A DNA stretch of 64,000 nt, from assembly GCF_026571515.1 (NCBI RefSeq), contig NW_026857357.1, forward strand, positions 248,001 through 312,000. The letters are read 5' to 3'. A program made the position numbers and the translations under genes. Each line of letters begins with the position of its first letter. The first letter of the stretch is position 1. This DNA is from Ruditapes philippinarum (Eukaryota). Shown piece by piece: positions 3,074-48,086 of the stretch. The notes below the pieces were generated by a model that was not told the origin of the DNA, searched no databases, and saw only the letters and a list, made by a program, of their open reading frames with translations.

Positions 3074-6000
3074 ATGAAAAGATACGTGTTATTGTGCTGT
3101 GCAGCTTTGCTGCTATTCTCAGTAGTTGTAAGGGCAGAAGATGATGAGGGCGAAGGAGAGGAGAAAAAGAAGAAAGAAGATGTTGGAACTGTAATTGGAA
3201 TTGACTTGGGAACAACATATTCATGGTGAGTATCTCCAGTTAGACTAGTCATTTAAATAGTATATATGGACAGAAATACATACATGTAAATGCCTATAGT
3301 ATCTGTGGATAGAAATATATAAATACCCATGGTTCTTCACCATAAAATTATGATAGTTATTTCAAGTTGGCAAAGTTTAATTGAAAAGTAATAAGTCTGT
3401 GAGTTATATGTATATAAAAGAAATTCAACTGGAAACTTTAGCGGGATCATTGTTTCTTTACACAGATTATTCTTAAGAAGTAATATAAGTAAAGATCTGA
3501 AAACTGCAGGTCAATGGTAACTTATATATATATATATATTTTTCTAAATTCTATTATTTTCAGTGTTGGTGTATACAGAAACAAACGTGTTGAAATCATT
3601 GCCAACGACCAAGGTAACCGTATTACTCCCTCATACGTGGCTTTCACTGATGACGGGGAGCGTCTCATTGGGGATGCTGCTAAGAACCAGCTTACCAGCA
3701 ATCCTGAGAACACCATCTTTGATGTGAAACGTTTTATTGGTAGAAACTGGGAAGACAAGTCTGTTCAACATGATGTAAAGTACTACCCATTTAAGGTCGT
3801 AAACAAGAACAGCAAACCTCATGTTCAAGCTAAAGTGAAGGGAGCCGATAAAATGTTCGCCCCAGAAGAAATATCTGCTATGGTTTTGGGAAAGATGAAG
3901 GAAGTGGCTGAAGATTACCTGGGAGAGACAGTTAAGAATGCTGTTGTAACTGTACCAGCCTACTTCAATGATGCTCAGAGACAGGCTACAAAAGATGCTG
4001 GCGCCATTGCTGGTCTTAATGTGATGAGAATCATTAATGAGCCGTAAGTACTGCGAAACAAACATAAATTAAAATTTTCAATATAAAAGTTGTACAAAAT
4101 CAGTTCAAACAGAATTTATTTTAGTTTGGTTGTGTAGCAACTGTAAACTTAAGTGATACACTCAGAAATCCAGCTATACACTCTCGAAAACCAAACATTA
4201 CAAAGCAATAAGTGTTAAGTTTCTTGATTAAGGTAATGCCTTGCCCCTGGCAGGGTCTTGACCCATGCAACCAGCAATCTTTGAATAGTGATTTAATAGA
4301 AACATTTCAAAGAATATAAGCTTTAAAAACTTTAGTAATATATAAGTAGATGTCATCATATTTTAGAAATTTGAAGAGTTGAGTTGAATAAATGCGGGCT
4401 TAAAAAATTAAAAATCTTGTTTCACATTTGCAGGACTGCTGCTGCTATTGCTTACGGTCTTGATAAGAAGGAAGGTGAGAAGAATATTCTCGTGTTTGAT
4501 CTTGGAGGTGGTACCTTTGATGTCTCCATTCTCACCATTGATGATGGTGTATTTGAAGTACTTGCTACCAACGGAGACACTCACTTGGGTGGTGAAGATT
4601 TCGACCAGCGTGTGATGGAGCACTTCATGAAATTGTACAAGAAGAAGAAGGGTAAGGACATCAGAAAGGACAACCGTGCTGTACAGAAACTCCGTCGTGA
4701 AGTTGAGAAGGCCAAGAGAGCTCTGTCCTCCCAGCATCAGACCAAAATTGAAATTGAATCTCTTTTTGATGGTGAAGATTTCAGTGAATCCTTGACCAGA
4801 GCTAAATTTGAAGAATTGAACATGGTATGTACACTACACTTAACAGTACTTATTACAGTTATTGTCAAAAGAGGAATTTTTTATTACATTACATATTGAT
4901 ATTACTAGTTAGGAATAATGAATCATCAATACTTAACAATTAACAATAATTATAAAACCTTCAAACTATAGAAATAAATGAGATACCAAAAAAATTATTT
5001 TTTTTTAAACTGGTAAAGTATAGTTGTATCAATTTTTCAGGACCTGTTCAGATCTACTTTGAAACCAGTACAGAAGGTTATGGAAGATGGAGATCTTAAG
5101 ATTTCTGATATTAATGAAATAGTCTTGGTTGGTGGATCAACAAGAATTCCAAAAGTTCAACAACTTGTTAAAGATTACTTCAATGGAAAGGTATGTTCTC
5201 ATTGTATTTTAAGCCTTTGTATATTGTCATTAACTCTGGGAAAATTAGGAATAAGAAAATATTAAAGTGACTTGCCTTGTCAATTGACAAAATTTTATAT
5301 CTGCACTGTAGAAGATTTAGATCTAATATGAATTCTTAGGGAGAATTTCACATTTCTTTGAAAGTTAAATTTTTTTGATTTCTGATGTTTTGCAAACAAG
5401 TAAGGTTGTAGGTTATAAGCACAGGAATATCTGTTTTGGGCTTATATTTTAAAATGCAACATCATCTTTAAGTATTAACACTACCGCTAACTTTGTACAT
5501 GAGTTTTATATTTTCAAGTATGCATACTTAACGGTATTGTGTATTTTTGTAGGAACCAAGCAGAGGTATTAACCCTGATGAAGCTGTGGCTTATGGAGCT
5601 GCTGTTCAGGCTGGAGTGCTTAGTGGACAGGAAGACACCAGTGACCTTGTCCTTCTCGACGTTAACCCTCTTACCATGGGTATCGAAACTGTTGGTGGCG
5701 TCATGACCAAACTTATCCCAAGAAACACTGTCATCCCAACAAAGAAGTCCCAAATTTTCTCCACAGCCGCTGATAACCAGCCAACTGTAACAATCCAGGT
5801 GTTTGAAGGAGAACGTCCAATGACCAAAGATAATCATTTGCTCGGAAAGTTTGATCTTACTGGCATTCCACCAGCACCAAGAGGAGTTCCCCAGATTGAG
5901 GTCACATTCGAAATTGATGTAAACGGTATCCTGAGAGTAACTGCTGAAGATAAGGGAACGGGAAGCAAAAATCATATTGTCATCACCAACGATAATAACA

Positions 6001-6380
6001 GACTTTCACCCGAAGACATTGAAAGAATGATTAACGATGCTGATAAATATGCTGCTGAAGACGCTGCTATGAAAGAAAAGGTTGAAGCCAAAAATGAACT
6101 TGAAAGCTATGCTTATTCATTGAAAAATCAAATTAATGACAAGGAAAAATTGGGAGCTAAACTTAGTGATGAAGATAAAGAAAGCATTGAAACTGCTTTA
6201 GATGAAAAAATTAAATGGTTAGAAGCTAATGCTGATGCAGATACTGAGGACTTTAAAGCACAAAAGAAAGAACTTGATGAAATTGTTCAACCCATTATGA
6301 GCAAACTTTACCAAGGTGCCGGTGGTGAGGGTGGAGCACCTCCACCTGGTGGTGAAGAGGGTGATCACGACGAGTTGTAA
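3074..6380 (+). CDS. HSPA5: Endoplasmic reticulum chaperone BiP / GRP78 (Hsp70 family)
   Basis: Exons 3074-3225, 3564-4043, 4434-4824, 5041-5190, 5553-6380 have canonical GT-AG introns and consistent phases. Signal peptide [21 protein letters not shown]; Hsp70 signatures [25 protein letters not shown] and [14 protein letters not shown]; C-terminal ER retention signal HDEL. A probable 5'UTR intron spans 2626-3071. Confidence 0.98.
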
Positions 6381-19651: not shown

Positions 19652-20907
19652 AAGTCTTACTTTGGGAAGAAAAAATCTTACTTTAGGAAGAAAAAGTCTT
19701 ACTTTAGGAAGAAAGACTTACTTTGGGAAGAAAAAATCTTACTTTAGGAAGAAAAAGTCTTACTTTAGGAAGAAAAAGACTTACTTTGGGAAGAAAAAGT
19801 CTTACTTTGGGAAGAAAAAGTCTTACTTTGGGAAGAAAAAGTCTTACTTTAGGAAGAAAAAGTCTTACTTTAGGAAGAAAAAATCTTACTTTAGGAAGAA
19901 AAAGTCTTACTTTGGGAAGAAAAAGTCTTACTTTGGGAAGAAAAAGTCTTACTTTGGGAAGAAAAAGTCTTACTTTGGGAAGAAAAAATCTTACTTTGGG
20001 AAGAAAAAGTCTTACTTTAGGAAGAAAAAATCTTACTTTAGGAAGAAAAAATCTTACTTTGGGAAGAAAAAATCTTACTTTAGGAAGAAAAAGTCTTACT
20101 TTAGGAAGAAAAAGTCTTACTTTAGGAAGAAAAAATCTTACTTTAGGAAGAATAAGTCTTACTTTAGGAAGAAAAATCTTACTTTGGAAGAAAAAATCTT
20201 ACTTTAGGAAGAAAAAGTCTTACTTTGGGAAGAAAAAGTCTTACTTTGGGAAGAAAAAGTCTTACTTTGGGAAGAAAAAGTCTTACTTTGGAAAGAAAAA
20301 GTGTTACTTTGGGAAGAGAAAGTCTTACTTTGGGAAGAAAAAGTCTTACTTTGGGAAGAGAAAGTCTTACTTTTGGAAGAGAAAGTCTTACTTTGGGAAG
20401 AAAAAGTCTTACTTTAGGAAGAAAAAGTCTTACTTTAGGAAGAAAAAGTCTTACTTTAGGAAGAAAAAATCTTACTTTAAGAAGAAAAAGTCTTACTTTA
20501 GGAAGAAAAAGTCTTACTTTAGGAAGAAAAAGTCTTACTTTAGGAAGAATAAAATCTTACTTTGGGAAGAAAAAGTCTTACTTTAGGAAGAAAAAGTCTT
20601 AGTTTGCGAAGAAAAAATCTTACTTTAGGAAGAAAAAGTCTTACTTTAGGAAGAAAAAGTCTTACTTTGGGAAGAAAAAATCTTACTTTAGGAAGAGAAA
20701 ATCTTACTTTAGGAAGAAAAAATCTTACTTAAGGAAGAAAAAGTCTTACTTGAGGAAGAAAAAATCTTACTTTGGGAAGAAAAAGTCTTACTTTAGGAAG
20801 AAAAAGTCTTACTTTGGGAAGAAAAAGTCTTACTTTGGGAAGAAAAAGTCTTACTTTGGCAAGAAAAAATTTTACTTTGGCAAGAAAAAGTCTTACTTAG
20901 GGAAGAA
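19652..20907. repeat. 21-bp minisatellite (AAGTCTTACTTTRGGAAGAAA)n, ~60 copies
   Basis: Directly visible homogeneous tandem array downstream of the VAMP4 stop codon; it produces the spurious LTLGRKS and SYFRKKK ORFs. Confidence 0.97.
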
Positions 20908-26540: not shown

Positions 26541-29500
26541 ATGATTAGGATTTGGCAATCGATGTGTAGTTTAAAATCTCAGAGAAAGTATCTATTTTAC
26601 ATATGTGTTTTATGCCTTGGTGTGTTAACCTTACAAGTCTCGCTATTCTGCGAAATCAATGCTAATTATGATAAAAAACGAATTGAAAAAAGAAGGTATG
26701 GACTTATGCAGGGATATTTAAAACCAGAGTCAAGGTCAGTGATAAATGTTGATTTTACTGTGAATAATGTCCTTGATCATATGACAAATGTCCGGCGCGG
26801 ATATTTTGGGAATGAAAATTTTACAGACAAAATGTCGGACTTTGTTAAGAACTACACTCTTCAAATTCATAAACAAGAGCTTTTGCGAGTAATCGTGATG
26901 CCACATTCGCACAACGACCCCGGTTTTAAGAAGACCTATTCAGAACACCCCGACCAATCAACAGATACTATTTTGTCATTAGCCGTCGAGAAACTGTTTC
27001 AATACCCTGACATGGCGTTTGTCTGGCCAGAAACTTGCTTTATTCAAAGATGGTGGAAAAATCAAAATGATACAACCAGGAATAAGTTAAAACAATTAGT
27101 AAAATCAGGCCGTCTGGAAATTACTTCCGGCGCTTGGGTCACACCGGATGAAGCTACGCCGCACTATTTTGCGTACTTAGATCAGCTGATTGAAGGTCAT
27201 TTTTGGGTCAAGCAGCATCTAGATGTAACACCAGTTGCATCTCTTGACATGGACCAGTTTGGCTATTCTTCAACTGCAAGATATTTATTGAAAAAGGCAG
27301 GAATAAAATATTCTGTGGTTAAACGAGTTCACATGGGAATGAAAGAATATCTTATGAAAACGAGGTTGATGAATTTCTACATGAAAACTCCATTTGATTT
27401 ATATGAACAAGGAATTTTCACACAGGTATTTTAATAAACTGTATTGATAAAATCACGTTGTACTAAGCAGTGTCTATTTTGAAGGGTATTGAAGACCTTT
27501 TCCCCCCATCATAGGAGAAAGTCATTTTTAAAGTTTTCTTTGTGGCAAACAAAATAGGCTTACATTGTATGACATAGCAATAGCATAATAGAAGAGAGTA
27601 TCTATGGTGGCTGGTTTGTAACATGTCGTTTTTCCCTCCGCTGAGCGCCAGACGAGAACACGAAAATACAACAAAATTACGACTTATAATCGTATTATCG
27701 TGTATTCACCTTGCTCCCCGCGGAGCTGAAGTACGACAAATTATTGTCTTTGTCATATGTACGAGTTTTTGTCTGGCGCCCCTCGGAGCAAAAATACGAC
27801 ATGTCATAAATCAGCCACCATACATATTTGAGAATACTGCACAACACACTGTAAACCTTTTTTTCGATTTATTAAAAACTTATACCATGCCATGTAAAGT
27901 AATTAAATGTATCATGAAAAAACTGAAGGCTATATATACGAGCAATAATATATGTCTAAATATAGAAAAAAAGTAATCAAAAAGAAAGAATTTCGGTAAT
28001 TTCTCCACTCAAAGTAAAGCGCCCGGTTCAAAATGATACTATCTATTCAAAACAATTATCAATGGAGGATACTTTACACCCAATGGTTATATTTCATTTT
28101 CAGCTCGACCATTATAATTAATATACATGGGACGAGCAATCCGTGTCTAGGGCATATCACAGCTATCTTAACGATAATATCCAAAAAAAATACACGCTAT
28201 AATTACAATGTATAGTACAAATAAACTTGTTCTATATAGAGCGTATTTTTTGGATATTATCTTTAATATTGGTTATATTGATAGAATTTCAAGTTCCTGT
28301 GGTCCTATATATAGTTAAGTTTTACGTAACAACCCCACTTATTCTTTACATTTGAGGTACTAGTATTGCTTTGAAACTATTACCAACATCCCAACATCTA
28401 GGCAAGAGGACATTGCCTTGTCATGGATATTGACCTATTTTTATTTAAAATTACGGTTAAGTTTTCCGAACCACCAACAAAAATGTCGGTTACGTTTTCC
28501 GTCTTTCCCCACTTTCTATACGTGTACACTTTGATCGAGGTGCGCGTATTGCTCTAAAGCTTACCATACATAATAGTGAGCATCAACCCCGCTTTCAGGC
28601 AAGAGGACAAAACTTTGACAAGAATTTTATCAAAATTATGCACAATTTTTTAAACAGTCTAATTCAACATTACCTTGTATTTTAACACAACAGGAAACAT
28701 TTTCACTTAGGTAAGTCGCTAATTTGTTTCGAGTTAGTATTACTCAACCATGTATTCCATTATATACCTAAAACGTTTTAAAATCAATTCTATCTTTGAA
28801 GGTTGAACCATACGAATGGCTAAGTTTTCCTGACAGTTGTGGCCCATCTAGAGATATATGTGCTGATCTTGATTTTGGACATGACGTCACACTTCCGGAT
28901 CCGGGTACACCGGAAGCAAACAAACCAATAAGGCTTTTAAATCACCATTACAGAAGCCTTTCATCGTTCGCAGACAAAGTTGTGCAACAACTGAAACGTA
29001 AAAGTAGATCGTTTCTGCATAATGTTTTGCTTCTACCACATGGCGATGATCTAAGGTATGGGACAGGTTATGAATGGGACAATCAGTATCGCAACATGAA
29101 GATTCTGATACAATACATTAATTCTAATCAAAACTACAACGTCAGAATGAAGTTTGGTACCCTGAAAGATTTCTTTACCGAGTTAGAAGAACGATCAGAG
29201 GTCAACTTCAAGTTCCCGGTTGTTAGTGGAGATTTTTTCCCATTTACAACCGGCAACGAGTACTGGAGTGGATTTTTCACAACGAGGCAATATTTGAAAA
29301 GACTCGGTCGCGAACTTCAGGAGTCTGTTCGTGCAGCCGACATTCTAGCTGCTTTGGTTATTTTAAGCGGACATGTTCATGAGATGTCGCGTGAAATTCT
29401 GACTTCAGTATTAGAACAACTGGTAGGTGCTAGAAGAGAACTTAGTGCGTTTCAACATCATGACGCTATAACCGGCACGTCACGCACACATGTCGTGAAA

Positions 29501-31201
29501 GGTTATGAAAATAAGTTGTCGTCTGCTTTGTCTGTGACGCAGCAGATCATGGCGTTCTTAATAGAAGTAATTCTTTTCAACGCTTGTAGTTTTAGGGATA
29601 AAGAGAATACTAGATGTGGATATCAGAAGGAAAATAGAATGAAAGACGGCAATACTCTAAGAACATCTGTATATGTTTTTCCCGCGTCTGTTCAAAAAGT
29701 GTCGGATGTTGAACTTGCATTTAATTCAAAGACAGACTATAGTTTAGTTTTATACAATGATTTTACTCAGGAAAGAGACGAAATTGTGGAGTTTTTATTT
29801 TCTAGTCCATATATATCAATATCGGATTATACATCAGGGAAAAACTATAGCTTTGATTATCTCTGGCAAGGTGAAATGGTGCATATATTCTTCAAAACAA
29901 GTTTACTTCCTTTAAGTATAACTACATTCAAAATTTTAAAATCACATCAAACATTTTTAGGAAAATCTATGAACATAAATCATTTTGATGTAAGTGATAC
30001 AAACTTTACTCTCTGTGAGAACAGTCAAGTGAATGTCACGTTTTCTTTATCTGACGGTTCACCGCAGGAAATTTGTTACAAAATAGAAAATTTCTGTGAA
30101 AAAATAAGAATTGATTGGAGACATTACCGACAAAGTGGCGGAGCATATTCTTTGTCTTTGAGTAACGAAAGTGTAAATTTGTTAAAATCGAATTTAAAAG
30201 TGCGCATGATATCTGGAAGCAAGCAATGCACTGTTGAGGTTTCGCATGACACGATTAAAATTGAATATGTTCTGAAAAATACTATCGGTCTAAATGGCCG
30301 ATATTTACAAGTGAATGTTCACACTGATCTGTCGCGAGCCAACGCAGGATATTTTGTTGGAGAAATTTCAATGAGAGTTGTCACTACCATCAACAATAGC
30401 GATATATTTTACACAGATTCAAACAGTTTACAACTTCTAGAACGGAAATACAGAAAAACCATGCCGTTCTCATCAAACGTTTATCCAATTTCGTCAATGG
30501 CCGCCATTAAAGATGGTTCCCGTATTTTAAATATACACACATCTCAGCCTCATGGAGCAGTATCATGGGAACCAGGTATTGTAGATCTATTTATAGACAG
30601 AGTGGCGCTAAAAGCGGAATATGGCCTTTGGCACGAAGTGAAGGACAACAAATTTACGTCAACAAAACTATATCTTCAGTTCGAATCGTGTACAAATTCA
30701 AATTCTGATTCAAAATCGGAGAATTTCGTACCATCTTTTGAAAGCTTGATAATAAACGATTTAGTTCAACATCCATTAAAAAGCTTCTTTTCTATAAAGG
30801 ATGTACCCCTAGAAAAAACCTCAGTTGGATTTTTACAAAGCAGTTTACCATGTGATATTACAATAGCTAATATGAAGTGTTTATGCCAAGATAATTTTGA
30901 CCTTGAGGGTGTTTCGTTGACCTTGTTTCGTAGGTTGGCAACGCGTTGTGATACTATACCAACAAAATGTGGCATTCCGGCGAAATATACAATGATTAGT
31001 CCAGACTCATTATTTATCAACAATCCGGGTAAAAACTTCACAGTAAAAGAGATGTCTTTGACGCATCTGAAAGTGAAGAAATCTCTAACTCAGTACGAAA
31101 TTGTTCCATTCGAAGAAATGGATTTAAAGACATTTTTATTTGTAAAAAATCCTCGTGTTAAAATGAAGAGAGAACGAAACAAAACAAATATATTTGTATA
31201 G
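26541..31201 (+). CDS. Golgi alpha-mannosidase II-like protein (GH38), type II membrane, divergent two-exon paralogue, ~1094 aa
   Basis: Exons 26541-27425 (CAG|GTATT) and 28802-31201 (AAG|GTT), phase 0. N-terminal signal anchor YLFYICVLCLGVLTLQVSLF; GH38 motifs PHSHNDPG, GAWVTPDEA, DMDQFGYS (nucleophile), HGDDLRY (acid/base), YWSGFFTTR and FQHHDAITGT. Confidence 0.93.
27603..27822. mobile_element. ~220-bp fold-back MITE in the mannosidase intron
   Basis: Termini TATGGTGGCTGGTTTGTAACATGTCGT and ACGACATGTCATAAATCAGCCACCATA are inverted complements; pairing continues inward (GCGCCAGAC / GTCTGGCGC). TA at both ends. Confidence 0.8.
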
Positions 31202-32484
31202 CCTGACATACATTTTATTATACTATATTTTTTTAAATAGGTGCTGTTTTAGATTAAGAGATTGATATAACAGATGGATAAGAAGCTTTTACAGAAGACA
31301 ATGTTGAGATTGACGACCAGAATCCTTTGCGTGAGCTTATCTGGCGTTTGGTGTTGTTCGATTTCCGCCATCTTGTTTTAATGTGGCAAACATTTTGAAG
31401 ATTTGTGTTATTGAAGGAGTTTCGATATTTTTGATTTTACAAACGTATAGATGCAAAAAAGTATAAGTCATTTTACTTTTAAGTTTCGCCGCAAATTAAA
31501 AATGGCGGAATAGAGAAATAGAGCAGAGAATATGAGTTCGCTTTAAAATACTTTACCAGATTTATACTGACGTCACAGCTTTGTCTTCTATGGCTTAAAA
31601 TAAACAAAAAGTGAACACTCCCTCTGTACCTTTCTAACTAAAGTTCAAGCCAAAGGTTTCTTATGTACACTACTAAAACACAAACAAACAAAGAAACAAA
31701 ACATATAGTCCAACACATTTTGCCTCTTTGGTATAATTAAAATGTATTTTATTGTTTGATTCATGTGAAATTTCGTATCAATTTGTCACCTTCTATGAAT
31801 TGACCAAAACAAACTACAACGTCAAATACTAGATCGTAGTTTATCGTATATGTTGCAATTGCCCAAGAAAAATACTCTTGATATAATATCAATCTAATAA
31901 AAGGCGTTTCTTCTCTCAAACATATTTATGTAGCTGATCTTAACATAATCCTGTGATCTTAAAAGATAATTTATCAAGTATGAACTTTTAAAGGCAAGTA
32001 AGCATGGATATCGGTATAACCGATGGATGAAACACCTTTTTCTCAACGCCAAATCAACATGAAACCAAACGCCAAATCAACATGAAACTAAACTTAATCA
32101 ACATGAAACTAAACCTAGGGAAAGTTGTACTTGCCTGGTACGAACATACCAAAATAATATACCAGTCAATAAAAGAAGGTACTTTGTGACTTTGTAAACT
32201 GACGTCGAATAAAGAGATAAAGTTAACATAAAAATTGTTAAAAAAGATTCCGAAAACAACAATGCAAATAGGTTAAATAAAAATGGCTTCTTTCATTGTG
32301 ATATCGGTGAAGGGTTGTCATATTTTACCAGATTATCTTTTATTCGTATGTTTGCAGATAAATAACCATGAATGAACCATGAATGATACATTTCTAAATG
32401 TTCTTTGTAACAAAAATATTTTAACCATTCGCCACATCTCATCAAATATAGTTTTCATTGCCGTCGTATAATTATAGTACCAAT

Positions 32485-32948
32485 GTTGTCGACACATTAA
32501 GCTGTTGTCGACGCATTGAGCTGTGATCGACGCATTGAGCTGATGTCGACGCAATGAGCTGATGTCGACGCATTGAGCTGTGGTCGATGCATTGAGCTGT
32601 GATCGACGCATTGAGCTGATGTCGACGCATTGAGCTGTTGTCGACGCATTGAGCTCTGGTCGATGCATTGAGCTGTAATCAACGCATTGAGCTGATGTCG
32701 ACGCATTGATCTGTTGCCAACGCATTGAGATGTTGTCGCCGCATTGAGCTGTGGTCGAAACATTGAGCTGTTGCCGACGCATTGAGCTGTTGTCGACGCA
32801 TTGAGCTGTGGTCGACGAATTGAGCTAATGCCGACGCATGGGGCTGATGTCGACGCATTGAGCTGTTGTCGACGCATTGAGCTGTGATCGACGCATTGAG
32901 CTGTTGTCGACGCATTGAGCTGTGATCGACGCATTGAGCTGTTGTCGG
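32485..32948. repeat. 19-bp CpG-rich minisatellite (GCTGTTGTCGACGCATTGA)n, ~24 copies
   Basis: Directly visible tandem array; source of the three spurious minus-strand ORFs. Confidence 0.95.
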
Positions 32949-33129
32949 GTTTTTTGATTGTACGGTGTGATTCTGTTCCGAATGTTAGATGTACCAAGTG
33001 ATGTATTGATTTTGCCTGAATTTGTTAAACTTGAACTCTACTTTTTACTTTTCAGATTCTACAAATGTAAATTTGATATGGAATTCAAATACCATTAACA
33101 TTTAATATAAAAAAAGTAAATGTTGTTGA

Positions 33130-33530
33130 TGCTTGCTGTCTATTTGGCTATGCTATCTTCGTTCTAGTACACTTGTATGCTTTTTGACTATGCTATATTC
33201 AAGTACACATGCACATACATATTTTGACGTTGCGCGGAAAAGTTGTGGTAATCGCCCTATCACCGTGATGCATATGCTTTTAAGGTATGCTATCTTCAAG
33301 TACGCGTATGTGCTATTTGACATTGTTATTTTCAAGTACACATGACTGTATGCTATTTGATTATGAGATATTCAAGTACACATGTATGTATGCAATTTGG
33401 CTAATTGTCTTCAACTACACATGATGTTCACTATGTTATCTTCTAGTACGCATGTATTTTATTTATCCTTGTTATTTTCAAGAACACATGTGTGCTATTT
33501 GACTATGTTGTCTTCAAGTAATCATGTATT
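33130..33530. repeat. Degenerate tandem repeat (TATGCTATCTTCAAGTACACATG-like units)
   Basis: Recurrent TGCTAT..TTCAAGTACAC(A)TG motifs at roughly 35-40 nt spacing, heavily diverged. Confidence 0.6.
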
Positions 33531-34670
33531 CAAACAGTCTGGAGTTCCTTCCCCTTATAATACTTTCCGTATTGAATGTAGGCAGGGAACCAGTATAACA
33601 AAGTTATATTTATTATTTCATTCGTAACTTCCTATACAGTACTTTATTTATAATGAATGCATTTTTGTTACATAAATATAAAGCATGCATATTAAGAAAT
33701 TCTAAAAGAAAATGCTTTTTTTCATGTACAGTCTGTATTTGAAAAACTTGTCAATACTGGATCTATCTTAATCATTTTATTTTTTTAATCATAGTGTTGC
33801 TATTGTCATCCGCGCTATGAAGAACTAAGAGAAGTTAATCAAATTACATAAATTTCAAAAGAAAAACTTATTTATCATATAAATATCTTAAAGGATGAGC
33901 ATATGTGGGAGACTATAATAAATAAATTCTATATGAATAGATGAAAAATAAATATACACATGAATAATTTTCTTTCTTTAAAAAACAAAAACAAAACAGA
34001 AAAAAAATATTTAAAAAAACAACAACAAAAGCTTACCACAGTCTAGTTTTTTTCCAAAATTATTTCTTTATTTTTTGTTTATAGCACTGTAATAGGTACT
34101 TTTCCTCCCCCCTCCCCCATCTTAGAGTGAGAGCAAGTTTAAGTGCGTGGGTGGGTTTGTTTGATGGGCACGTGAATGCATGCACGTGGATATATGACTG
34201 CGATCACGTATATAGAACTGTATTTATACGATTCTAAGGACACTTCCAACAGCGAGCCAATTTTAGATATGACGGTGCCATTTTGTTTTTAGCAGTTAGC
34301 ACAATACCGAACTTAACAATGTTGGTTCCATGTTATCCAGGTGGTTGCCTCCCCTTAATTATATTTACAAATTGAAATAAAATATGCCCCATAATTCTTA
34401 TGTAACAGGTAACGCAATAAAATTGATTTTCGATATTTGTGGAAAAAGGTTAAATTTCAAAATCCTAAAGTTATCAAAGTGAAATGCGCACCGATATATT
34501 TATCGATATATCATCCACTATTAAAACAAAACTAAATCTTTAAATCTTTACTTATCACATTTTACCGAGATAACGGACAATTACGTGACCAAGACAACAA
34601 TCTACATTTACCACAAAAGTCTTATCATTTTTCTGTTAATTTTACTTCAAAATCAGGCTTAAGACTGAAA

Positions 34671-36867
34671 ATGGTTCGTATAACTTGCGAAAAGTTAACC
34701 CTTCACCTGCTGGAAACAAAAGTGCTTCGACTTTGCCATCAGTATAGAGCCAGGCGAGCCTGCACATCCCTGCAGTCTGACCGGGCTCTAACACAGATGG
34801 CTGACTAACTTCATTTTTTTATCTTGATATTCAAAATATTGATAATGAACAATTTCATAATAGAAGCTTGAAAAGTTCATTTCGAAATTCAGCAGGTCAA
34901 GTGGTAATATTAATAATAACAATTCTCTTTTGATTATATTTCAGTAATTTACAGTAATTAAAGTTGTTTTTAACTTAATTTTGTTTTAATCTTATTGCAG
35001 CTATCTTTAATATTTATTTTGGAAATATTCCTTTCGCTTACGATCGTCAGAGGTGATGATTGCGCATGCGCGACGACAAACGTTCATATCCGCGAGAGCG
35101 CTGGAACCAATTCTGCAATTTTGGCCACTCTAAGAAATCAGCACTGCGTGCAGTTTAACGGTCAAAGACAAACAGTCGATGGAACCTCGTGGGTTAACGT
35201 GATTTACAACGGAAAGGTCAGTTAACATAAAACTTTAATATTGTTTATTAAAGAAGAAAATCTAGCCAGCAGTCTTGAGGATCTGCATTGTTAATATTAA
35301 CATATAGAACGACAACGATTGCAGCCAAAGATACGACTAATAATAGTAATATAGTAACATACTCATTTTACATTCTAAAACTATTTTATTATGCTCGAAT
35401 TTACAGCATGCCAGATCTGAATGCTGATTTTTAGATTTTTAACTGCCAAAAAAGGATGCAGACTAATACATAAAACAGGATAGTACCGTTACTTGACGCT
35501 TGATAGAGCTACGTTGGCTTTGGTCCTATAAAAATCTATGTGAGGCAAAAATTAATGTTGTATCAGTTAATTCTTACTGTTCTATAGAACGGCTGGATTC
35601 ACGAAGCATACGTCACGATATCGTCTTGTATTACGCATGCGCCAACAAACTTACAACAGCTACAACTTTCGGGATGTCCGAATATTATAACAAGGGCGGA
35701 ATGGGGAGCACGTGCTCCTACTCAATATGCAGGACGGTTACCAGCCACACCAAAGTATATGTTTCTGCATCATGGCGCCTCCTCACCTTGTTTCACAAAG
35801 GACAAATGCATTGACAAAGTTCAAGGTTATCAAAACTGGCATATGGATGGTCATGGTATTTAGCAAGTATTTTAACTCATACATCTGATTGCCTGATTGT
35901 ATAACAATATAAACTCTATGTTCGGTTGTCATGTCACTTGTACATGGTACATTTTGAAGAACATGATTTCGTAAACCAGTCGTACCGACCCGAACCCGTG
36001 AATCTAGTATTATATATATATATATAAACGCTTAAAACAGAAGTAACGAATTCATAGCTCTTTGCAAAGCCATTCCAGATTGAAATTTCATTACATGTAT
36101 CCATGATTTGTATTCCCCATAAACTTGAATATAATACTTAGGAACCATTTCAATTATACAATTTTAGGCTGGAATGATATTGGATATAGCTTTGTTGTTG
36201 GTGAAGACGGCAATGTGTATGAAGGGCGTGGCTGGGATACGATTGGAGCACATACTAAACATTACAATACCGTTGGGCTAGGTTTGTAGCTTTAGGTCAT
36301 TGTTTTAGAAAAAAAAGGGAGTGGTTATAAATTGCAACACGAACGCTAGAGCAATTTTGAAAAATAAAATAAGCCGCCATTCTAAATCATTGCTTTGTTG
36401 CTTTTACAAAATGCTGTAGACGTTATAATGTTTGAGGACTTATTAAACATTTGTACCGTATAATAATAATGTTGATGATGATGATGATAATGATAATAAC
36501 AATTGAGATGATAAAAATGTGTTTTATGTTTGCAATGGTAATAACGATATAGACAAAGTCCTTGAGCTCGCTTCTTTCTTGACCTTTTTCACACCAATAC
36601 TGTTTGTTCAAATTGGGAACTAGTAATTTCGAGTATTAATTTTGATTTTATTTTACAACAGCTATTTGCGTCATTGGTGATTTCACCGACCATGTTCCAA
36701 ATCAAGCGGCTTTAGATGCGGTACAGAAACTGATTGCCTGTGGTGCTGCAAACAATAAACTTGTCGCGAACTACACTCTCCTCGGACACCGAGATGTCGG
36801 GTCTACAGCCTGTCCTGGCACAGCGTACTATAACCTGATTCAGACCTGGCCACATTATAACCTGTGA
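34671..36867 (+). CDS. PGRP: Secreted peptidoglycan recognition protein (Zn-amidase type) with N-terminal SH3b-like domain
   Basis: Exons: putative ATG at 34671-34673 (ATG|GTTCGT, inferred), 35001-35216, 35588-35855, 36168-36281, 36662-36867, all in phase. Signal peptide (M)LSLIFILEIFLSLTIVRG; SH3b-like NVHIRESAGTNSAILATL...SWVNVIYNGKNGWIHEAYV; PGRP/Amidase_2 domain CPNIITRAEWGAR..FLHHGA..GWNDIGYSFVVGEDGNVYEGRGW..GAH..GHRDVGSTACPG..TWPHY. Confidence 0.95.
34695..34907. mobile_element. piggyBac-like MITE in PGRP intron 1
   Basis: Starts TTAA-CCCTTCACCTGCTG and ends CAGCAGGTCAAGTGGTAA (degenerate TIR); internal inverted repeat AGAGCCAGGC..GCA / TGCAGTCTGACCGGGCTCT. A related fragment lies at ~44150-44200. 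Confidence 0.6.
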
Positions 36868-37748
36868 ATTGTAGGATAATTCAACAGAGCACTGTTTCAA
36901 ATTATATTTAAATCTACAATGAAATTGATAAAAAATATAGTGTAAATTATTTTCTTTAGTTGAAACTACGGTTTCAGTTAGTTTGTGTGACTGTATTTTT
37001 CTATATCTCTGCGGTCGCTCCACCTAGACGGATATCCTGAATAACTAACCAGTTGATATCTGATCAGATGATATTTTTTTTTAAACAAACAATAGAAACA
37101 TTACAAACATAGACGATTTTAACTGATGAAGAACTTGGAAAACAAAACACAATTGTTCACTACTTTAATAAAATCGTATATTTAAGCTTTTATTGATGAA
37201 TTTAGCAAGATACATTAAAGAAAGTTTGGCAATCAGAAATACTCTCTTAAATATTTGATTTTTTAACATCCTCTTGGAAAATAATTTTTTTTACAATTCT
37301 CATATATTATAACATCATGTTTGTTTGTGTAATCATGCATTGTTCTTAAATAATAAAGGTATTTTCTCTTATTTGATACATTATCATATGATATGTGTGT
37401 GTTAACGTGTATAGCTTTTAATGATACTGTTCTCTATCTAGAAAGAATTAAACTGCTCAATAAGTATTTAGTTTTGCTGCTGGTTAACATCTATCCTTCG
37501 CCTTTATCGGGAGGGAGTTTTACTTTCAGTGGGATGGTTAGACTCATTTGGTAAAATATGGTATACAATATCCTGTGAGGTTGCCAGTAGAATTTCTATT
37601 ACTGCTATGATTGAGAAAATATTTACTTATTACTCATAACAATGTACATTCTATTATATATTCTAAGTATCACATTGTACTTTGTGTTACCATGATCACG
37701 TGACGGGATAATTGTTTTATTTATCTATATGCATGACGATGTACTATG

Positions 37749-46900: not shown

Positions 46901-48086
46901 ATCTTGAGTCCTATATAACTTTCTTTATCTCATTGTTTTTTTGTTTATTACACATGAATCAAAGTATGTCATATCTTAACTAATCTTTTTCTAGAAAAAC
47001 AGAACAAATGGTCAAGATAGAGCTAGAGCTGTTCAAGAAATATGCGAAACATTAAATTCATCAGATGCTTTTGGGATACAACTTAATGGCAAGCTACTTC
47101 AGGACCAATCACTTTATTTCTGTGATGTTCCGAAATGTGGGTCTGCATTCATGGAACTTTTTCTGTCAAGCGTGTTTCAATGCAATGGAACATGTCAAGA
47201 AACTTCCATAACTCCTGATGAACGACGGACTAATGACGAGTCATTAAAACAGACGCCCGCTGCATATTCGTTTATGTTTGTCCGCGAACCATATGCACGA
47301 TTGTTTTCAGCATATGAAAATAAACTTTTCTTACCAAACAAACACTGGATAATATTGGGTATAGATATAATAAAAACAGTAAGACCTCGCGCGTCCCTTG
47401 TTAGCAGGACGTTAGGACATGATGTCACGTTTCTTGAATTAGTGAAATATGTAATTTATAACTACGAACACGGAATAACTTTAAATTCACATCTCCAACC
47501 TATGCACATGTATTGTAACACATGTAACTTTCAGTATTCCTTCATTGGCAAGTTAGAAACAATGTCCAGTGATCTTGTCGATTTAATTGATTACTGGAAA
47601 CACAACAGTATTGTTCCTAAAAACGTGTCATCCGCCGCAGAAATAGAGGCACACATGCTGTATAAGCGATCCTTTGGGCCATACAAGCACATGTTTATGA
47701 CTTTAAAGAAATATGGCGAGATTTTATCAAGATACAAACTTTTTCAAAGAACCTGGTCAAGCTATCATATTCGAGGGCTTATACTGAAGAAATTTAGAAT
47801 GCCTTTTGGCGAAAGCGAAGTAAACAATGTCGGCTATGTAATGTTTGGTAATGAAATTAAAAGTGCAATTGATAAAAGCTTGCCGTTTAAAGAAGATCTG
47901 AAAGCACAACGAGAGGAAGCACTTGTGCAAGCTTATAGTACTGTACCTTTTGAGCTTATGACAAAGCTTAAAGAGTTTATGAAACTCGATTGTCTATTGT
48001 TTGATTATGAAACGATGCCAAAAATAATATTTGATAAAATTAGTTCAAATAATTCATTTGAATTTGATTATTTTAAGGGCTTGTAG
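43991..48086 (+). CDS. Carbohydrate sulfotransferase, Sulfotransfer_2 family (CHST8-14/HNK-1ST-like); 5' end unresolved
   Basis: Main exon 46995-48086 (TTTTTCTAG|AAA, in frame with ORF 47151) contains 5'-PSB FCDVPKCGSAF, 3'-PB FMFVREPYARLFSAYENK, HLQPMHMYCNTC..YSFIGKLET and the C-terminal DCLLFDY. An S/T-rich stem exon ends at 44100 (GAG|GTATAA); its acceptor (43926, 43966 or 43991) and the TM exon are uncertain. Confidence 0.88.
44583..46664. mobile_element. Non-autonomous TIR DNA transposon (Kolobok-like) in the sulfotransferase intron, interrupted by a HINE
   Basis: Left end TAGGCTTCAGAAAATAAATTCCTAGATTCTCATCC versus right end GGATGAGAATCTAGTTATTTATTTTCTATTGCCTTAA form an imperfect ~35-bp TIR with shared CTAGATTCTCATCC; CCCGCCC motifs lie inside both ends. 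Confidence 0.65.
45326..46277 (-). mobile_element. Non-autonomous Helentron-type element (HINE), minus orientation, 170-bp tandem units
   Basis: Hairpin AGTCCCCTCCGGTAAACCGGTAGGGGACT (46244-46272), GACG/GACA microsatellite (46181-46230), about 3 units of 170 bp, second subTIR AGTCCCCTACCGG (~45363) and terminal AAACAAG. Confidence 0.8.

What the first reader, a model, noticed from the sequence alone, without database searches (positions are those of the whole stretch)
34671..36867. Animal PGRP amidase fused to a bacterial-type SH3b cell-wall-binding module (endolysin/autolysin-like architecture)
Seen: the spliced product is signal peptide, then ~65 aa ATTNVHIRESAGTNSAILATLRNQHCVQFNGQRQTVDGTSWVNVIYNGKNGWIHEAYVTI, a linker and a PGRP domain. 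Established: this pattern (NxxIR..G.....I..L ... W..V...G..GWI...YV) is the SH3_3/SH3b signature of bacterial and phage wall hydrolases, not the eukaryotic polyproline-binding SH3. The PGRP keeps the amidase Zn/catalytic set (H of FLHH, Y of IGYS, H of GHR, C of TACPG). Inference: a secreted, wall-targeted antibacterial enzyme built from a horizontally acquired module, since domesticated by a phase-0 intron inside it (35217-35587) and four added cysteines (CAC, HC, SSC) that could form two disulfides. The ORF track shows only fragments of it. SH3b annotations on some bivalve PGRPs or lysozymes may already exist, so novelty needs checking.
Basis: partly seen in the sequence, partly recalled or inferred. 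Interest (0 to 1): 0.8.

Follow-up and report, generated by a model that had tools for sequence, protein, structure and literature searches.

The report
Clam SH3b-PGRP wall amidase gene
This is a real, expressed clam gene for a secreted enzyme that joins a bacterial-type wall-gripping SH3 module to an animal peptidoglycan-cutting PGRP domain, but the design has been published for molluscs since 2012, so this is one more member of a known family.

Summary
All introns are GT..AG. The product is about 268 aa: signal peptide, SH3b head split by a phase-0 intron, then a PGRP domain with the Zn/Tyr amidase residues.

The head is bacterial-type SH3. Exon 2 alone hits Pfam SH3_3 weakly because the intron cuts the domain. 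The complete head of the Mercenaria ortholog passes Pfam's threshold, and its model matches solved SH3b wall-binding domains of Firmicutes and phage lysins.

The architecture is not new. It was reported in Mytilus edulis (2012), Charonia tritonis (2022, amidase and antibacterial activity shown) and Magallana gigas (2025). It is annotated in more than 20 bivalve and gastropod species. Two paralogs in this genome match Ruditapes philippinarum RefSeq proteins exactly.

Additions here:
- All animal four-cysteine heads group apart from bacterial SH3_3 domains, which fits one origin.
- The intron position looks widely conserved.
- The head diverges about six times faster than the amidase domain between two clams.

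Horizontal capture is plausible and ancient, but unproven. An earlier scan note reports SH3b-like heads on lectins in this genome; they are not detectably this domain.

The parts
34640..34673 (+). Exon 1: 5'UTR (at least 34 nt seen) ending in the start codon ATG at 34671-34673. The donor GT follows directly.
   Evidence: Joint 34673|35001 in RNA contig of run X2; sequence. The true 5' end was not determined.
34674..35000 (+). Intron 1 (327 nt, GT..AG, phase 0). It contains a dispersed short repeat at about 34695-34810.
   Evidence: joint; 41 scored copies at 80-90% identity and 534 first-look candidates in the genome. Very high RNA depth at 34731-34790 with loose ends on both sides comes from other copies.
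35001..35054 (+). Rest of the predicted signal peptide (hydrophobic stretch ending V-R-G).
   Evidence: Translation. Same position as the signal peptides of the paralogs and of the Mercenaria ortholog. No signal-peptide predictor was available, so this is inferred.
35055..35216 (+). SH3b (SH3_3) head, first about three quarters. It includes the C-x-C motif and the mid-domain cysteine.
   Evidence: Pfam SH3_3 E=0.0028, profile 2-44/54. A profile of the clam exons finds bacterial SH3_3 wall hydrolases. Four paralogous exons in the genome.
35217..35587 (+). Intron 2 (371 nt, GT..AG, phase 0), inside the SH3b domain.
   Evidence: Joint in runs X1 and X2. Same position in all four clam paralogs. 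22 database fragments break off at this point with a valine (GTN) read-through.
35588..35629 (+). Last strands of the SH3b head (G-W-I motif) and the fourth cysteine.
   Evidence: Translation. Complete heads of homologues cover Pfam SH3_3 positions 1-53/54. Model and Foldseek hits.
35630..35671 (+). Linker of 14 residues, poorly conserved.
   Evidence: 50% identity to the Mercenaria ortholog against 93-100% in the PGRP parts.
35672..35855 (+). PGRP domain, N-terminal part, with the L-H-H motif (first Zn histidine).
   Evidence: Matches amphioxus PGRP3 (4Z8I) at E=9.7e-11, with H-H aligned to H-H.
35856..36167 (+). Intron 3 (312 nt, GT..AG, phase 1).
   Evidence: Joint in X1 and X2.
36168..36281 (+). 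PGRP domain, middle part, with the catalytic tyrosine (I-G-Y-S).
   Evidence: Pfam Amidase_2. Matches PGRP-LE at 8.6e-14, PGRP-LB and T7 lysozyme. With 1OHT the offset puts the Tyr at Y78.
36282..36661 (+). Intron 4 (380 nt, GT..AG, phase 1).
   Evidence: Joint in X1 and X2.
36662..36867 (+). PGRP domain, C-terminal part, with G-H-R-D (second Zn histidine) and T-A-C-P-G (Zn cysteine). Stop TGA at 36865-36867.
   Evidence: Pfam Amidase_2 E=4.1e-8, 34.1 bits, over the cut-off. 1OHT offset gives H152 and C160. Human PGRP-S has Ser at the Cys position.
36868..36934 (+). 3'UTR up to the poly-A site.
   Evidence: RNA contig of X2 ends at 36934 with a loose A-run.

Best explanation
This is a five-exon, expressed gene of a venerid clam, almost certainly Ruditapes philippinarum. 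It encodes a secreted protein of about 268 aa. The N-terminal head is a bacterial-type SH3 (SH3_3/SH3b) domain carrying four conserved cysteines. A short linker joins it to an animal PGRP domain that keeps the full zinc-amidase set (His, Tyr, His, Cys). The likely mechanism is as follows. The head docks the protein on peptidoglycan or another wall polymer. The PGRP domain then cuts the MurNAc-L-Ala amide bond. The result is either killing or weakening of bacteria, or removal of immunostimulatory peptidoglycan in gut, gill or haemolymph. The gene belongs to a mollusc-wide, already described SH3b-PGRP subfamily that goes back to before the bivalve-gastropod split. It is the ortholog of a Mercenaria mercenaria 'PGRP-SC2-like' protein. 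Shown here: gene structure, expression, domain identities and residue conservation. Inferred: secretion, disulfides, wall binding and catalysis.
For: - Splicing and expression.
- Domains: Pfam exon by exon. PDB sequence matches for the PGRP exons with residue offsets to PGRP-LB Y78/H152/C160 (residue roles from PMC8124813).
- Complete heads of 9 mollusc homologues all hit SH3_3. The ortholog head scores 34.9 bits against a cut-off of 27, over profile 1-53/54.
- The head profile hits solved Firmicutes SH3b domains: 2KQ8 at 5.6e-7 and 2KRS at 1.9e-6.
- The AlphaFold model of the ortholog head has pLDDT 89.7. Its best Foldseek hits are bacterial SH3b and lysin wall-binding domains (2KT8 TM 0.73, 9OVI, PlySb, ALE-1, lysostaphin).
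- Family membership: 50 of 51 SH3b-bearing PGRPs fall in one clade with support 96. Ortholog P0225 is 97/100/93% identical over the three PGRP exon parts (158 of 165 residues, 96%).
- Species: paralogs at C391 and C12937 equal R. philippinarum RefSeq proteins P0210 and P0238 over the exons read.
- Animal context: neighbours in the window are HSP70/BiP, a GH38 mannosidase and a sulfotransferase.
- Function of relatives: Ct-PGRP-S1 degrades peptidoglycan and is antibacterial (PMC9570181). MgPGRP5 binds and agglutinates microbes (PMC11810698). Fusing a carbohydrate-binding domain raises the activity of amphioxus PGRP3 (title of PMC4610682).
Against: - No biochemical data exist for this protein.
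- Exon 2 alone is below Pfam's SH3_3 cut-off (18.3 against 27 bits), because the domain is split by the intron.
- The structural test was done on the ortholog's head, which is 75% identical (51 of 68 residues), not on the window's own head.
- The first Zn histidine was aligned only to amphioxus PGRP3, not directly to PGRP-LB.
- MgPGRP5 was reported mainly as a binding and agglutinating receptor, and partly nuclear in haemocytes. Catalysis may therefore not be the main role in every member.
- One clam paralog (P0238) has lost a Zn histidine and the cysteine.
- The exon 1 joint rests on one contig with a 34-nt anchor.
Confidence: 0.85

Rival explanations
1. The protein acts mainly as a non-lytic pattern-recognition receptor or agglutinin, or as a peptidoglycan scavenger that dampens immune signalling like Drosophila PGRP-LB/SC, rather than as a bactericidal wall-targeted lysin.
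For: MgPGRP5, with the same architecture, was characterised as a broad binder and agglutinin induced by PGN and LPS (PMC11810698). Catalytic PGRP-LB down-regulates the IMD pathway (abstract of PMC8124813). Paralog P0238 has lost a Zn His and the Cys yet keeps the head, so binding without catalysis exists in this family.
Against: This copy keeps every catalytic residue. Its PGRP domain is 96% identical to the Mercenaria ortholog. Ct-PGRP-S1, with the same architecture, degrades PGN and inhibits bacteria (PMC9570181). The two roles do not exclude each other.
Confidence: 0.3
2. The SH3b head was not horizontally acquired. It descends vertically from an old eukaryotic SH3-like domain, or arose by convergence.
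For: No donor lineage can be named. The head has been in molluscs since before the bivalve-gastropod split. It has its own intron and cysteines. The animal heads form one group apart from all sampled bacterial domains.
Against: The head matches Pfam's bacterial SH3_3 over its full length. The mollusc head profile scores single Cys-free SH3_3 domains at 50-61 bits, including the same loop length. These proteins carry no source names; bacterial origin is inferred from their partner domains and serine-rich linkers. Solved Firmicutes SH3b domains are the best sequence and fold matches, ahead of eukaryotic SH3. Among the 120 listed PGRP relatives that carry organism names, only mollusc ones carry the head.
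Confidence: 0.3
3. The locus is bacterial or phage contamination, or a recent whole-gene transfer of an endolysin (amidase + SH3b).
For: Bacterial and phage lysins combine Amidase_2 catalytic domains with SH3b wall-binding domains (one search hits such as Ly7917 and the phiSM101 endolysin).
Against: Four spliceosomal GT..AG introns are removed in RNA. The flanking genes are animal genes. The PGRP domain nests among animal PGRPs. The domain order is reversed relative to typical lysins, with the head N-terminal. Four to five paralogs lie on other contigs with the same intron.
Confidence: 0.01

Closest known systems
Mollusc SH3b-containing PGRPs: Mytilus edulis HE609081 (PMC3308963), Charonia tritonis Ct-PGRP-S1 (PMC9570181), Magallana gigas MgPGRP3/5 (PMC11810698); ortholog Mercenaria mercenaria 'PGRP-SC2-like isoform X1' (P0225)
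   Same: Signal peptide, one N-terminal SH3_3/SH3b head with C-x-C...C...C, a linker, and a C-terminal Amidase_2/PGRP domain with amidase residues. Same PGRP clade. 96% PGRP identity to P0225.
   Different: Nothing in kind. This copy is unstudied. Its head differs from the Mercenaria ortholog at 25% of positions against 4% in the PGRP domain. Some relatives carry two or three heads (Potamilus P0013, Pomacea P0001, Haliotis P0119).
Phage and bacterial cell-wall hydrolases with SH3b wall-binding domains (lysostaphin/ALE-1, PlySb of ClyR, Ly7917, phiSM101 endolysin, Bacillus/Clostridium SH3_3 repeats)
   Same: The logic is the same: a catalytic peptidoglycan hydrolase tethered to an SH3b targeting module. 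The head shares their fold and SH3_3 sequence signature.
   Different: The catalytic domain is an animal PGRP, not a bacterial lysin domain. The head is N-terminal, single, carries four cysteines and is interrupted by an intron. The protein is exported by a eukaryotic signal peptide and acts from outside on foreign cells.
Amphioxus BbtPGRP3 (PDB 4Z8I; PMC4610682)
   Same: It is the best solved match for the PGRP exons, with identical G-H-R-D-V-G-S-T-A-C-P-G. It is also an amidase PGRP fused to an N-terminal carbohydrate-binding module.
   Different: Its N-terminal module is a chitin-binding domain, not SH3b.
Drosophila PGRP-LB/SC amidases and T7 lysozyme
   Same: Amidase_2 fold and the Zn-His/His/Cys plus Tyr set (PMC8124813).
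   Different: They have no targeting head.

Membership tests
PGRP / Amidase_2 (PF01510), catalytic subclass | Significant match to the Amidase_2/PGRP profile | tested here: met
Exon 5 scores 34.1 bits against a cut-off of 26. The exons match solved PGRPs at E down to 3.7e-17.
PGRP / Amidase_2 (PF01510), catalytic subclass | Zn ligands and catalytic Tyr (PGRP-LB H42, Y78, H152, C160) | tested here: met
   With 1OHT offsets, the exon 4 Tyr maps to Y78 and the exon 5 His and Cys to H152 and C160. The first His was aligned to H-H of amphioxus PGRP3 only. Human PGRP-S shows Ser at the Cys site. Residue roles are from PMC8124813.
PGRP / Amidase_2 (PF01510), catalytic subclass | Measured N-acetylmuramoyl-L-alanine amidase activity | not testable with these tools
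   Shown only for the relative Ct-PGRP-S1 (PMC9570181).
Bacterial SH3 domain, SH3_3 (PF08239) / SH3b | Profile match above Pfam's gathering score over the whole domain | tested here: inconclusive
   The window's exon 2 alone scores 18.3 bits against 27, over profile 2-44/54, because the intron cuts the domain. The complete ortholog head scores 34.9 bits over profile 1-53/54, and 9 of 9 mollusc heads match. The window's own complete head was not scanned because exons may not be joined.
Bacterial SH3 domain, SH3_3 (PF08239) / SH3b | SH3b beta-barrel fold closest to bacterial wall-binding SH3b rather than eukaryotic SH3 | tested here: met
   Tested on the ortholog head (75% identical). pLDDT is 89.7. 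The Foldseek top 10 are all bacterial or phage SH3b (TMq 0.62-0.73); the first eukaryotic SH3 appears at rank 11.
Bacterial SH3 domain, SH3_3 (PF08239) / SH3b | Binding to peptidoglycan or another wall polymer | not testable with these tools
   In the library searched, only docking has been published for MgPGRP5 (PMC11810698).
Mollusc SH3b-PGRP subfamily | PGRP domain groups with the other SH3b-bearing mollusc PGRPs | tested here: met
   Tested by proxy. The ortholog P0225 and paralogs P0210 and P0238 lie in the clade (support 96) that holds 50 of 51 SH3b-bearing rows.
Mollusc SH3b-PGRP subfamily | Head with conserved C-x-C ... C ... C and an intron after the G-x that precedes G-W | tested here: met
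   (cysteines). (intron).
Phage/bacterial endolysin or autolysin | Bacterial or phage gene: no introns, lysin-type catalytic domain, wall-binding domain usually C-terminal | tested here: not met
   There are four spliced introns. The catalytic domain nests in animal PGRPs. The head is N-terminal. It works like a lysin but is not one.

The most novel reading that the evidence does not exclude
A single Firmicutes- or phage-type SH3_3 wall-binding module was captured by an ancestor of bivalves and gastropods. It was stapled with two disulfides, split by an intron and fused in front of a resident PGRP amidase. Since then the head, not the enzyme, has been the fast-evolving part that retargets the amidase to different bacterial walls. 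A more diverged six-cysteine version on PGRPs from unidentified organisms in environmental transcriptomes hints that the invention reaches beyond the annotated molluscs.
Probability: 0.45. Interest if true: 0.45.

Novelty: new member of a known kind. Interest (0 to 1): 0.27.

Why it matters
The gene is a clean, expressed example of an animal immune enzyme built on the same plan as phage lysins: a catalytic domain plus an SH3b targeting module. That plan is of practical interest for shellfish disease (Vibrio) and for engineered antibacterials. The architecture itself is already published and widely annotated in molluscs, so the finding does not open a new field.

What remains open, and could be taken further from this locus:
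- Where the head came from. Capture from bacteria is likely but unproven, and no paper in the library searched addresses it.
- Whether its four cysteines form two disulfides.
- Whether the head sets target specificity, as its faster divergence suggests.

Tried and rejected
- Exon 2 alone against PDB sequences gave only a weak hit (2KRS, E=1.3). A profile of complete heads was needed.
- A Pfam SH3_3 scan of the clam's own genome did not list this locus among its nine matches. That search is a lower bound and no evidence against the domain.
Read-through fragments were used as indirect evidence instead.
- Rfam found nothing in 33000-37500. The highly covered stretch in intron 1 is a dispersed repeat, not an RNA gene.
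A head profile finds only the four intact PGRP paralog loci plus one partial exon in this genome, so they are not detectably the same at this sensitivity.
- Contamination and whole-lysin transfer were rejected.
- Disulfide geometry could not be checked because model coordinates are not exposed.
- The N run near 37.7-38.0 kb was left untouched.
Full report
**1. Is it there?**

Yes.

Laying public mollusc RNA runs on 31500-37400 gave spliced contigs in two runs from different studies: X2 (915 nt) and X1 (765 nt). After the tool's stated cut offsets, the joints are 35216|35588, 35855|36168 and 36281|36662. All are GT..AG and present in both runs. X2 alone also shows 34673|35001, with a 34-nt anchor. 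X2 ends at 36934 in an A-run.

The gene model is therefore:
- Exon 1: from at most 34640 to 34673, 5'UTR plus the ATG.
- Exon 2: 35001-35216.
- Exon 3: 35588-35855.
- Exon 4: 36168-36281.
- Exon 5: 36662-36867 (TGA), followed by a 3'UTR of about 67 nt.

The introns are phase 0, 0, 1 and 1, and the product has 268 residues.

The 45-codon ORF that starts at 34671 is not coding beyond its ATG. It runs into intron 1, which carries a dispersed repeat. That repeat explains the very high RNA depth at 34731-34790.

Ten of the twelve variants seen in RNA contigs within the exons are synonymous. This is what an intact gene under constraint should show.

Each exon was searched apart, and full-length database homologues were used where a whole protein was needed.

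**2. What are the domains?**

*PGRP domain.*
- Exon by exon, Pfam gives Amidase_2 for exons 4 and 5. Exon 5 is above the curated cut-off.
- The PGRP exons match solved PGRPs strongly. The best match is amphioxus PGRP3 (4Z8I), which shares the stretch G-H-R-D-V-G-S-T-A-C-P-G.
- Using the ungapped offsets to Drosophila PGRP-LB (1OHT), the exon 4 tyrosine is Y78. The exon 5 histidine and cysteine are H152 and C160.
- PMC8124813 shows these are the catalytic Tyr and two of the three Zn ligands, and that the His/His/Cys ligands are conserved only in catalytic PGRPs.
- The first His lies in L-H-H, aligned to I-H-H of 4Z8I.
- Human PGRP-S, which is not an amidase (my own knowledge), has Ser where this protein has Cys.

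*SH3b head.*
- Exon 2 alone hits SH3_3 at E=0.0028, over profile positions 2-44 of 54. The match stops where the intron cuts the domain.
- A profile of the four clam SH3b exons, searched against 1.84 billion representatives, found 262 proteins at E<=1e-3.
- These fall into two kinds. One kind is mollusc heads, alone or on PGRPs. The other is bacterial multi-SH3_3 wall hydrolases, such as a Shouchella glucosaminidase with 12 repeats and an unnamed metagenome protein with six SH3_3 repeats and NlpC/P60.
- Single Cys-free SH3_3 domains score 50-61 bits against the mollusc head profile and share its loop lengths. These proteins carry no source names. I read them as bacterial from their partner domains and serine-rich linkers.
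- Complete heads from nine mollusc homologues all hit SH3_3. The Mercenaria ortholog head scores 34.9 bits against a cut-off of 27, over profile 1-53/54.
- Their profile finds solved Firmicutes SH3b domains: 2KQ8 at 5.6e-7, 2KRS at 1.9e-6, then 2KT8, 9OVI and 2KYB.
- An AlphaFold model of the ortholog head (pLDDT 89.7, all-beta) has bacterial and phage SH3b wall-binding domains as its best Foldseek hits. These include 2KT8 (TM 0.73), 9OVI, 2KRS, PlySb, Ly7917, ALE-1, lysostaphin and the phiSM101 endolysin. Eukaryotic SH3 domains come below them.

The head is therefore a bacterial-type SH3.

**3. Whose gene, and is it alone?**

The genome is 1.41 Gb. The RNA runs that hold the gene are labelled mollusc.

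Two paralogs found with the exon queries are identical, over the exons read, to RefSeq proteins named for Ruditapes philippinarum (P0210 and P0238). An earlier scan note also calls this genome Manila clam.

The window's gene has a clear ortholog in the hard clam: Mercenaria mercenaria 'PGRP-SC2-like isoform X1' (P0225, 266 aa).

The clam has four loci with this head and the same intron position, on contigs C5844, C391, C12937 and C10529. The C10529 copy carries an in-frame stop. A partial fifth head exon lies on C391. P0238 has lost a Zn histidine and the cysteine (G-A-R-D and T-A-S-P-G), so it is a non-catalytic sister.

The neighbours in the window are ordinary animal genes: an HDEL-ending HSP70 (BiP type), a GH38 alpha-mannosidase and a sulfotransferase.

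**4. Is it new?**

No. Three papers already describe it:
- Philipp et al. 2012 reported a Mytilus edulis PGRP with an added SH3b domain (HE609081). They noted that the combination had not been seen before (PMC3308963).
- Ct-PGRP-S1 of Charonia tritonis (SH3_3 + Amidase_2) degrades peptidoglycan and is antibacterial. That paper lists Pomacea, Dreissena and Mercenaria proteins with the same head (PMC9570181).
- MgPGRP5 of Magallana gigas (SH3b + PGRP) binds and agglutinates microbes. The SH3b-bearing oyster PGRPs form their own branch (PMC11810698).

A word search with a Littorina homologue lists the PF01510+PF08239 architecture in more than 20 species:
- Gastropods: Littorina, Pomacea, Batillaria, Charonia, Babylonia, Haliotis, Patella, Gigantopelta.
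- Bivalves: Solemya, Mytilus, Saccostrea, Tegillarca, Sinanodonta, Potamilus, Mactra, Mya, Dreissena, Mercenaria, Archivesica, Ruditapes.

The listed insect, turtle, tick, rotifer and annelid relatives have the PGRP domain only.

**5. What I can add.**

(a) In a tree of 118 PGRP domains, 50 of 51 head-bearing proteins lie in one clade with support 96. The well-supported branches force only three changes of the trait, and many head-less rows in that clade are truncated models.

(b) In a tree of 312 SH3 domains, all 87 four-cysteine heads sit on one side of a branch with support 98, against 225 bacterial-type domains. Three caveats apply: only 70 columns, an unrooted tree, and the cysteine columns were not removed. 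Together (a) and (b) fit one origin of the fusion followed by descent, duplication and occasional loss.

(c) The intron inside the head is at the same place in all four clam paralogs. In addition, 22 database fragments from genomic contigs, each representing a different 50%-identity cluster, leave the domain consensus exactly there and continue with valine (GTN). That is the mark of reading into a phase-0 GT intron.

(d) Between the Ruditapes gene and its Mercenaria ortholog, the head is 75% identical (51 of 68 residues). The PGRP domain is 96% identical (158 of 165 residues). The head thus changes about six times faster. Whether this is positive selection or laxer constraint was not tested.

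**6. Horizontal origin.**

The head belongs to a family that is overwhelmingly bacterial and phage. Its nearest sequence and fold relatives are Firmicutes-type SH3b domains. Among the named relatives listed in this search, only molluscs carry it on a PGRP. Capture from bacteria is therefore the simplest account.

It would have been capture of the module, not of a whole lysin. The PGRP domain nests among animal PGRPs, and the domain order is the reverse of typical lysins.

However, no donor clade was resolved, the event predates the bivalve-gastropod split, and I found no paper that addresses it. I rate transfer at roughly one in two to two in three.

**7. Mechanism.**

The inferred sequence is:
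- Export by the signal peptide.
- The head, probably braced by two disulfides, binds the wall.
- The PGRP domain hydrolyses the MurNAc-L-Ala bond.

Relatives support both a lytic role (Charonia) and a binding or agglutinating role (oyster). A scavenger, immune-dampening role like PGRP-LB cannot be excluded. Only the domain and residue facts are shown here.

**8. Verdict.**

Its interpretation is right except for the unproven transfer. The finding is a new member of a known kind.

Noticed in passing
Proteins P0259, P0270, P0273, P0285, P0267, P0294 (JGI/Logan contigs of about 1 kb, no organism named): This is a separate clade of amidase-type PGRPs whose N-terminal head has six cysteines and is invisible to Pfam. 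The head is homologous to the mollusc SH3b head (hhalign probability 97.6%, E=3.7e-12). It is modelled at pLDDT 88.9, with bacterial SH3b as best but weak fold hits (2KT8, E=9e-3). The source organisms are unknown, so the SH3b-PGRP design may reach beyond annotated molluscs.
   Followed up: partly
G000:C12937:128603-129795 (locus L004; protein P0238, R. philippinarum): This paralog keeps the SH3b head, but its PGRP domain reads G-A-R-D and T-A-S-P-G. It has lost one Zn histidine and the Zn cysteine, so it is a likely non-catalytic binder derived from the amidase.
   Followed up: partly
G000:C10529:22885-24034 (locus L003): This is a near-copy of the C12937 paralog with an in-frame TGA in the exon that starts the PGRP domain. 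It could be a pseudogene, an allelic haplotig or an assembly error.
   Followed up: no
G000:C391:13035-14768 (+) and C391:18358-19922 (-): Two PGRP genes lie tail to tail on one contig. The + gene equals P0210. The - gene has only a partial head match (profile 21-58, E=6e-4).
   Followed up: no
window 34695-34810 (intron 1): A short dispersed repeat with hundreds of copies in the genome (534 first-look candidates, 80-90% identity). It is heavily represented in RNA runs through other copies. There is no Rfam match.
   Followed up: partly
window 33219-33268: A 50-nt stretch with high RNA depth and loose ends on both sides in three runs. It is probably part of another repeat or of a conserved element expressed elsewhere.
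   Followed up: no
window 3514-6380 (+): Exons of an HSP70-family chaperone ending in HDEL (ER-resident BiP/GRP78 type).
   Followed up: partly
window 26541-31201 (+): Large exons of a GH38 alpha-mannosidase (N-terminal, middle and C-terminal domains).
   Followed up: partly
window 47151-48086 (+): An intron-less 311-aa ORF with a Sulfotransfer_2 domain (carbohydrate sulfotransferase type).
   Followed up: partly
window 19662-20602 and 32333-32997: Long tandem repeats that read as open frames (KKKSYF/GRKSLTL units; repeats of about 17 aa on the minus strand). They are most likely satellite-like DNA rather than genes.
   Followed up: no
window exon 4, 36170-36280: Where PGRP-LE has the Arg said to anchor DAP-type peptidoglycan (G-Y-N-R, from my memory of the literature), this protein has Thr (H-Y-N-T) in the alignment. 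This is a lead on Lys- versus DAP-type preference, not a test.
   Followed up: no
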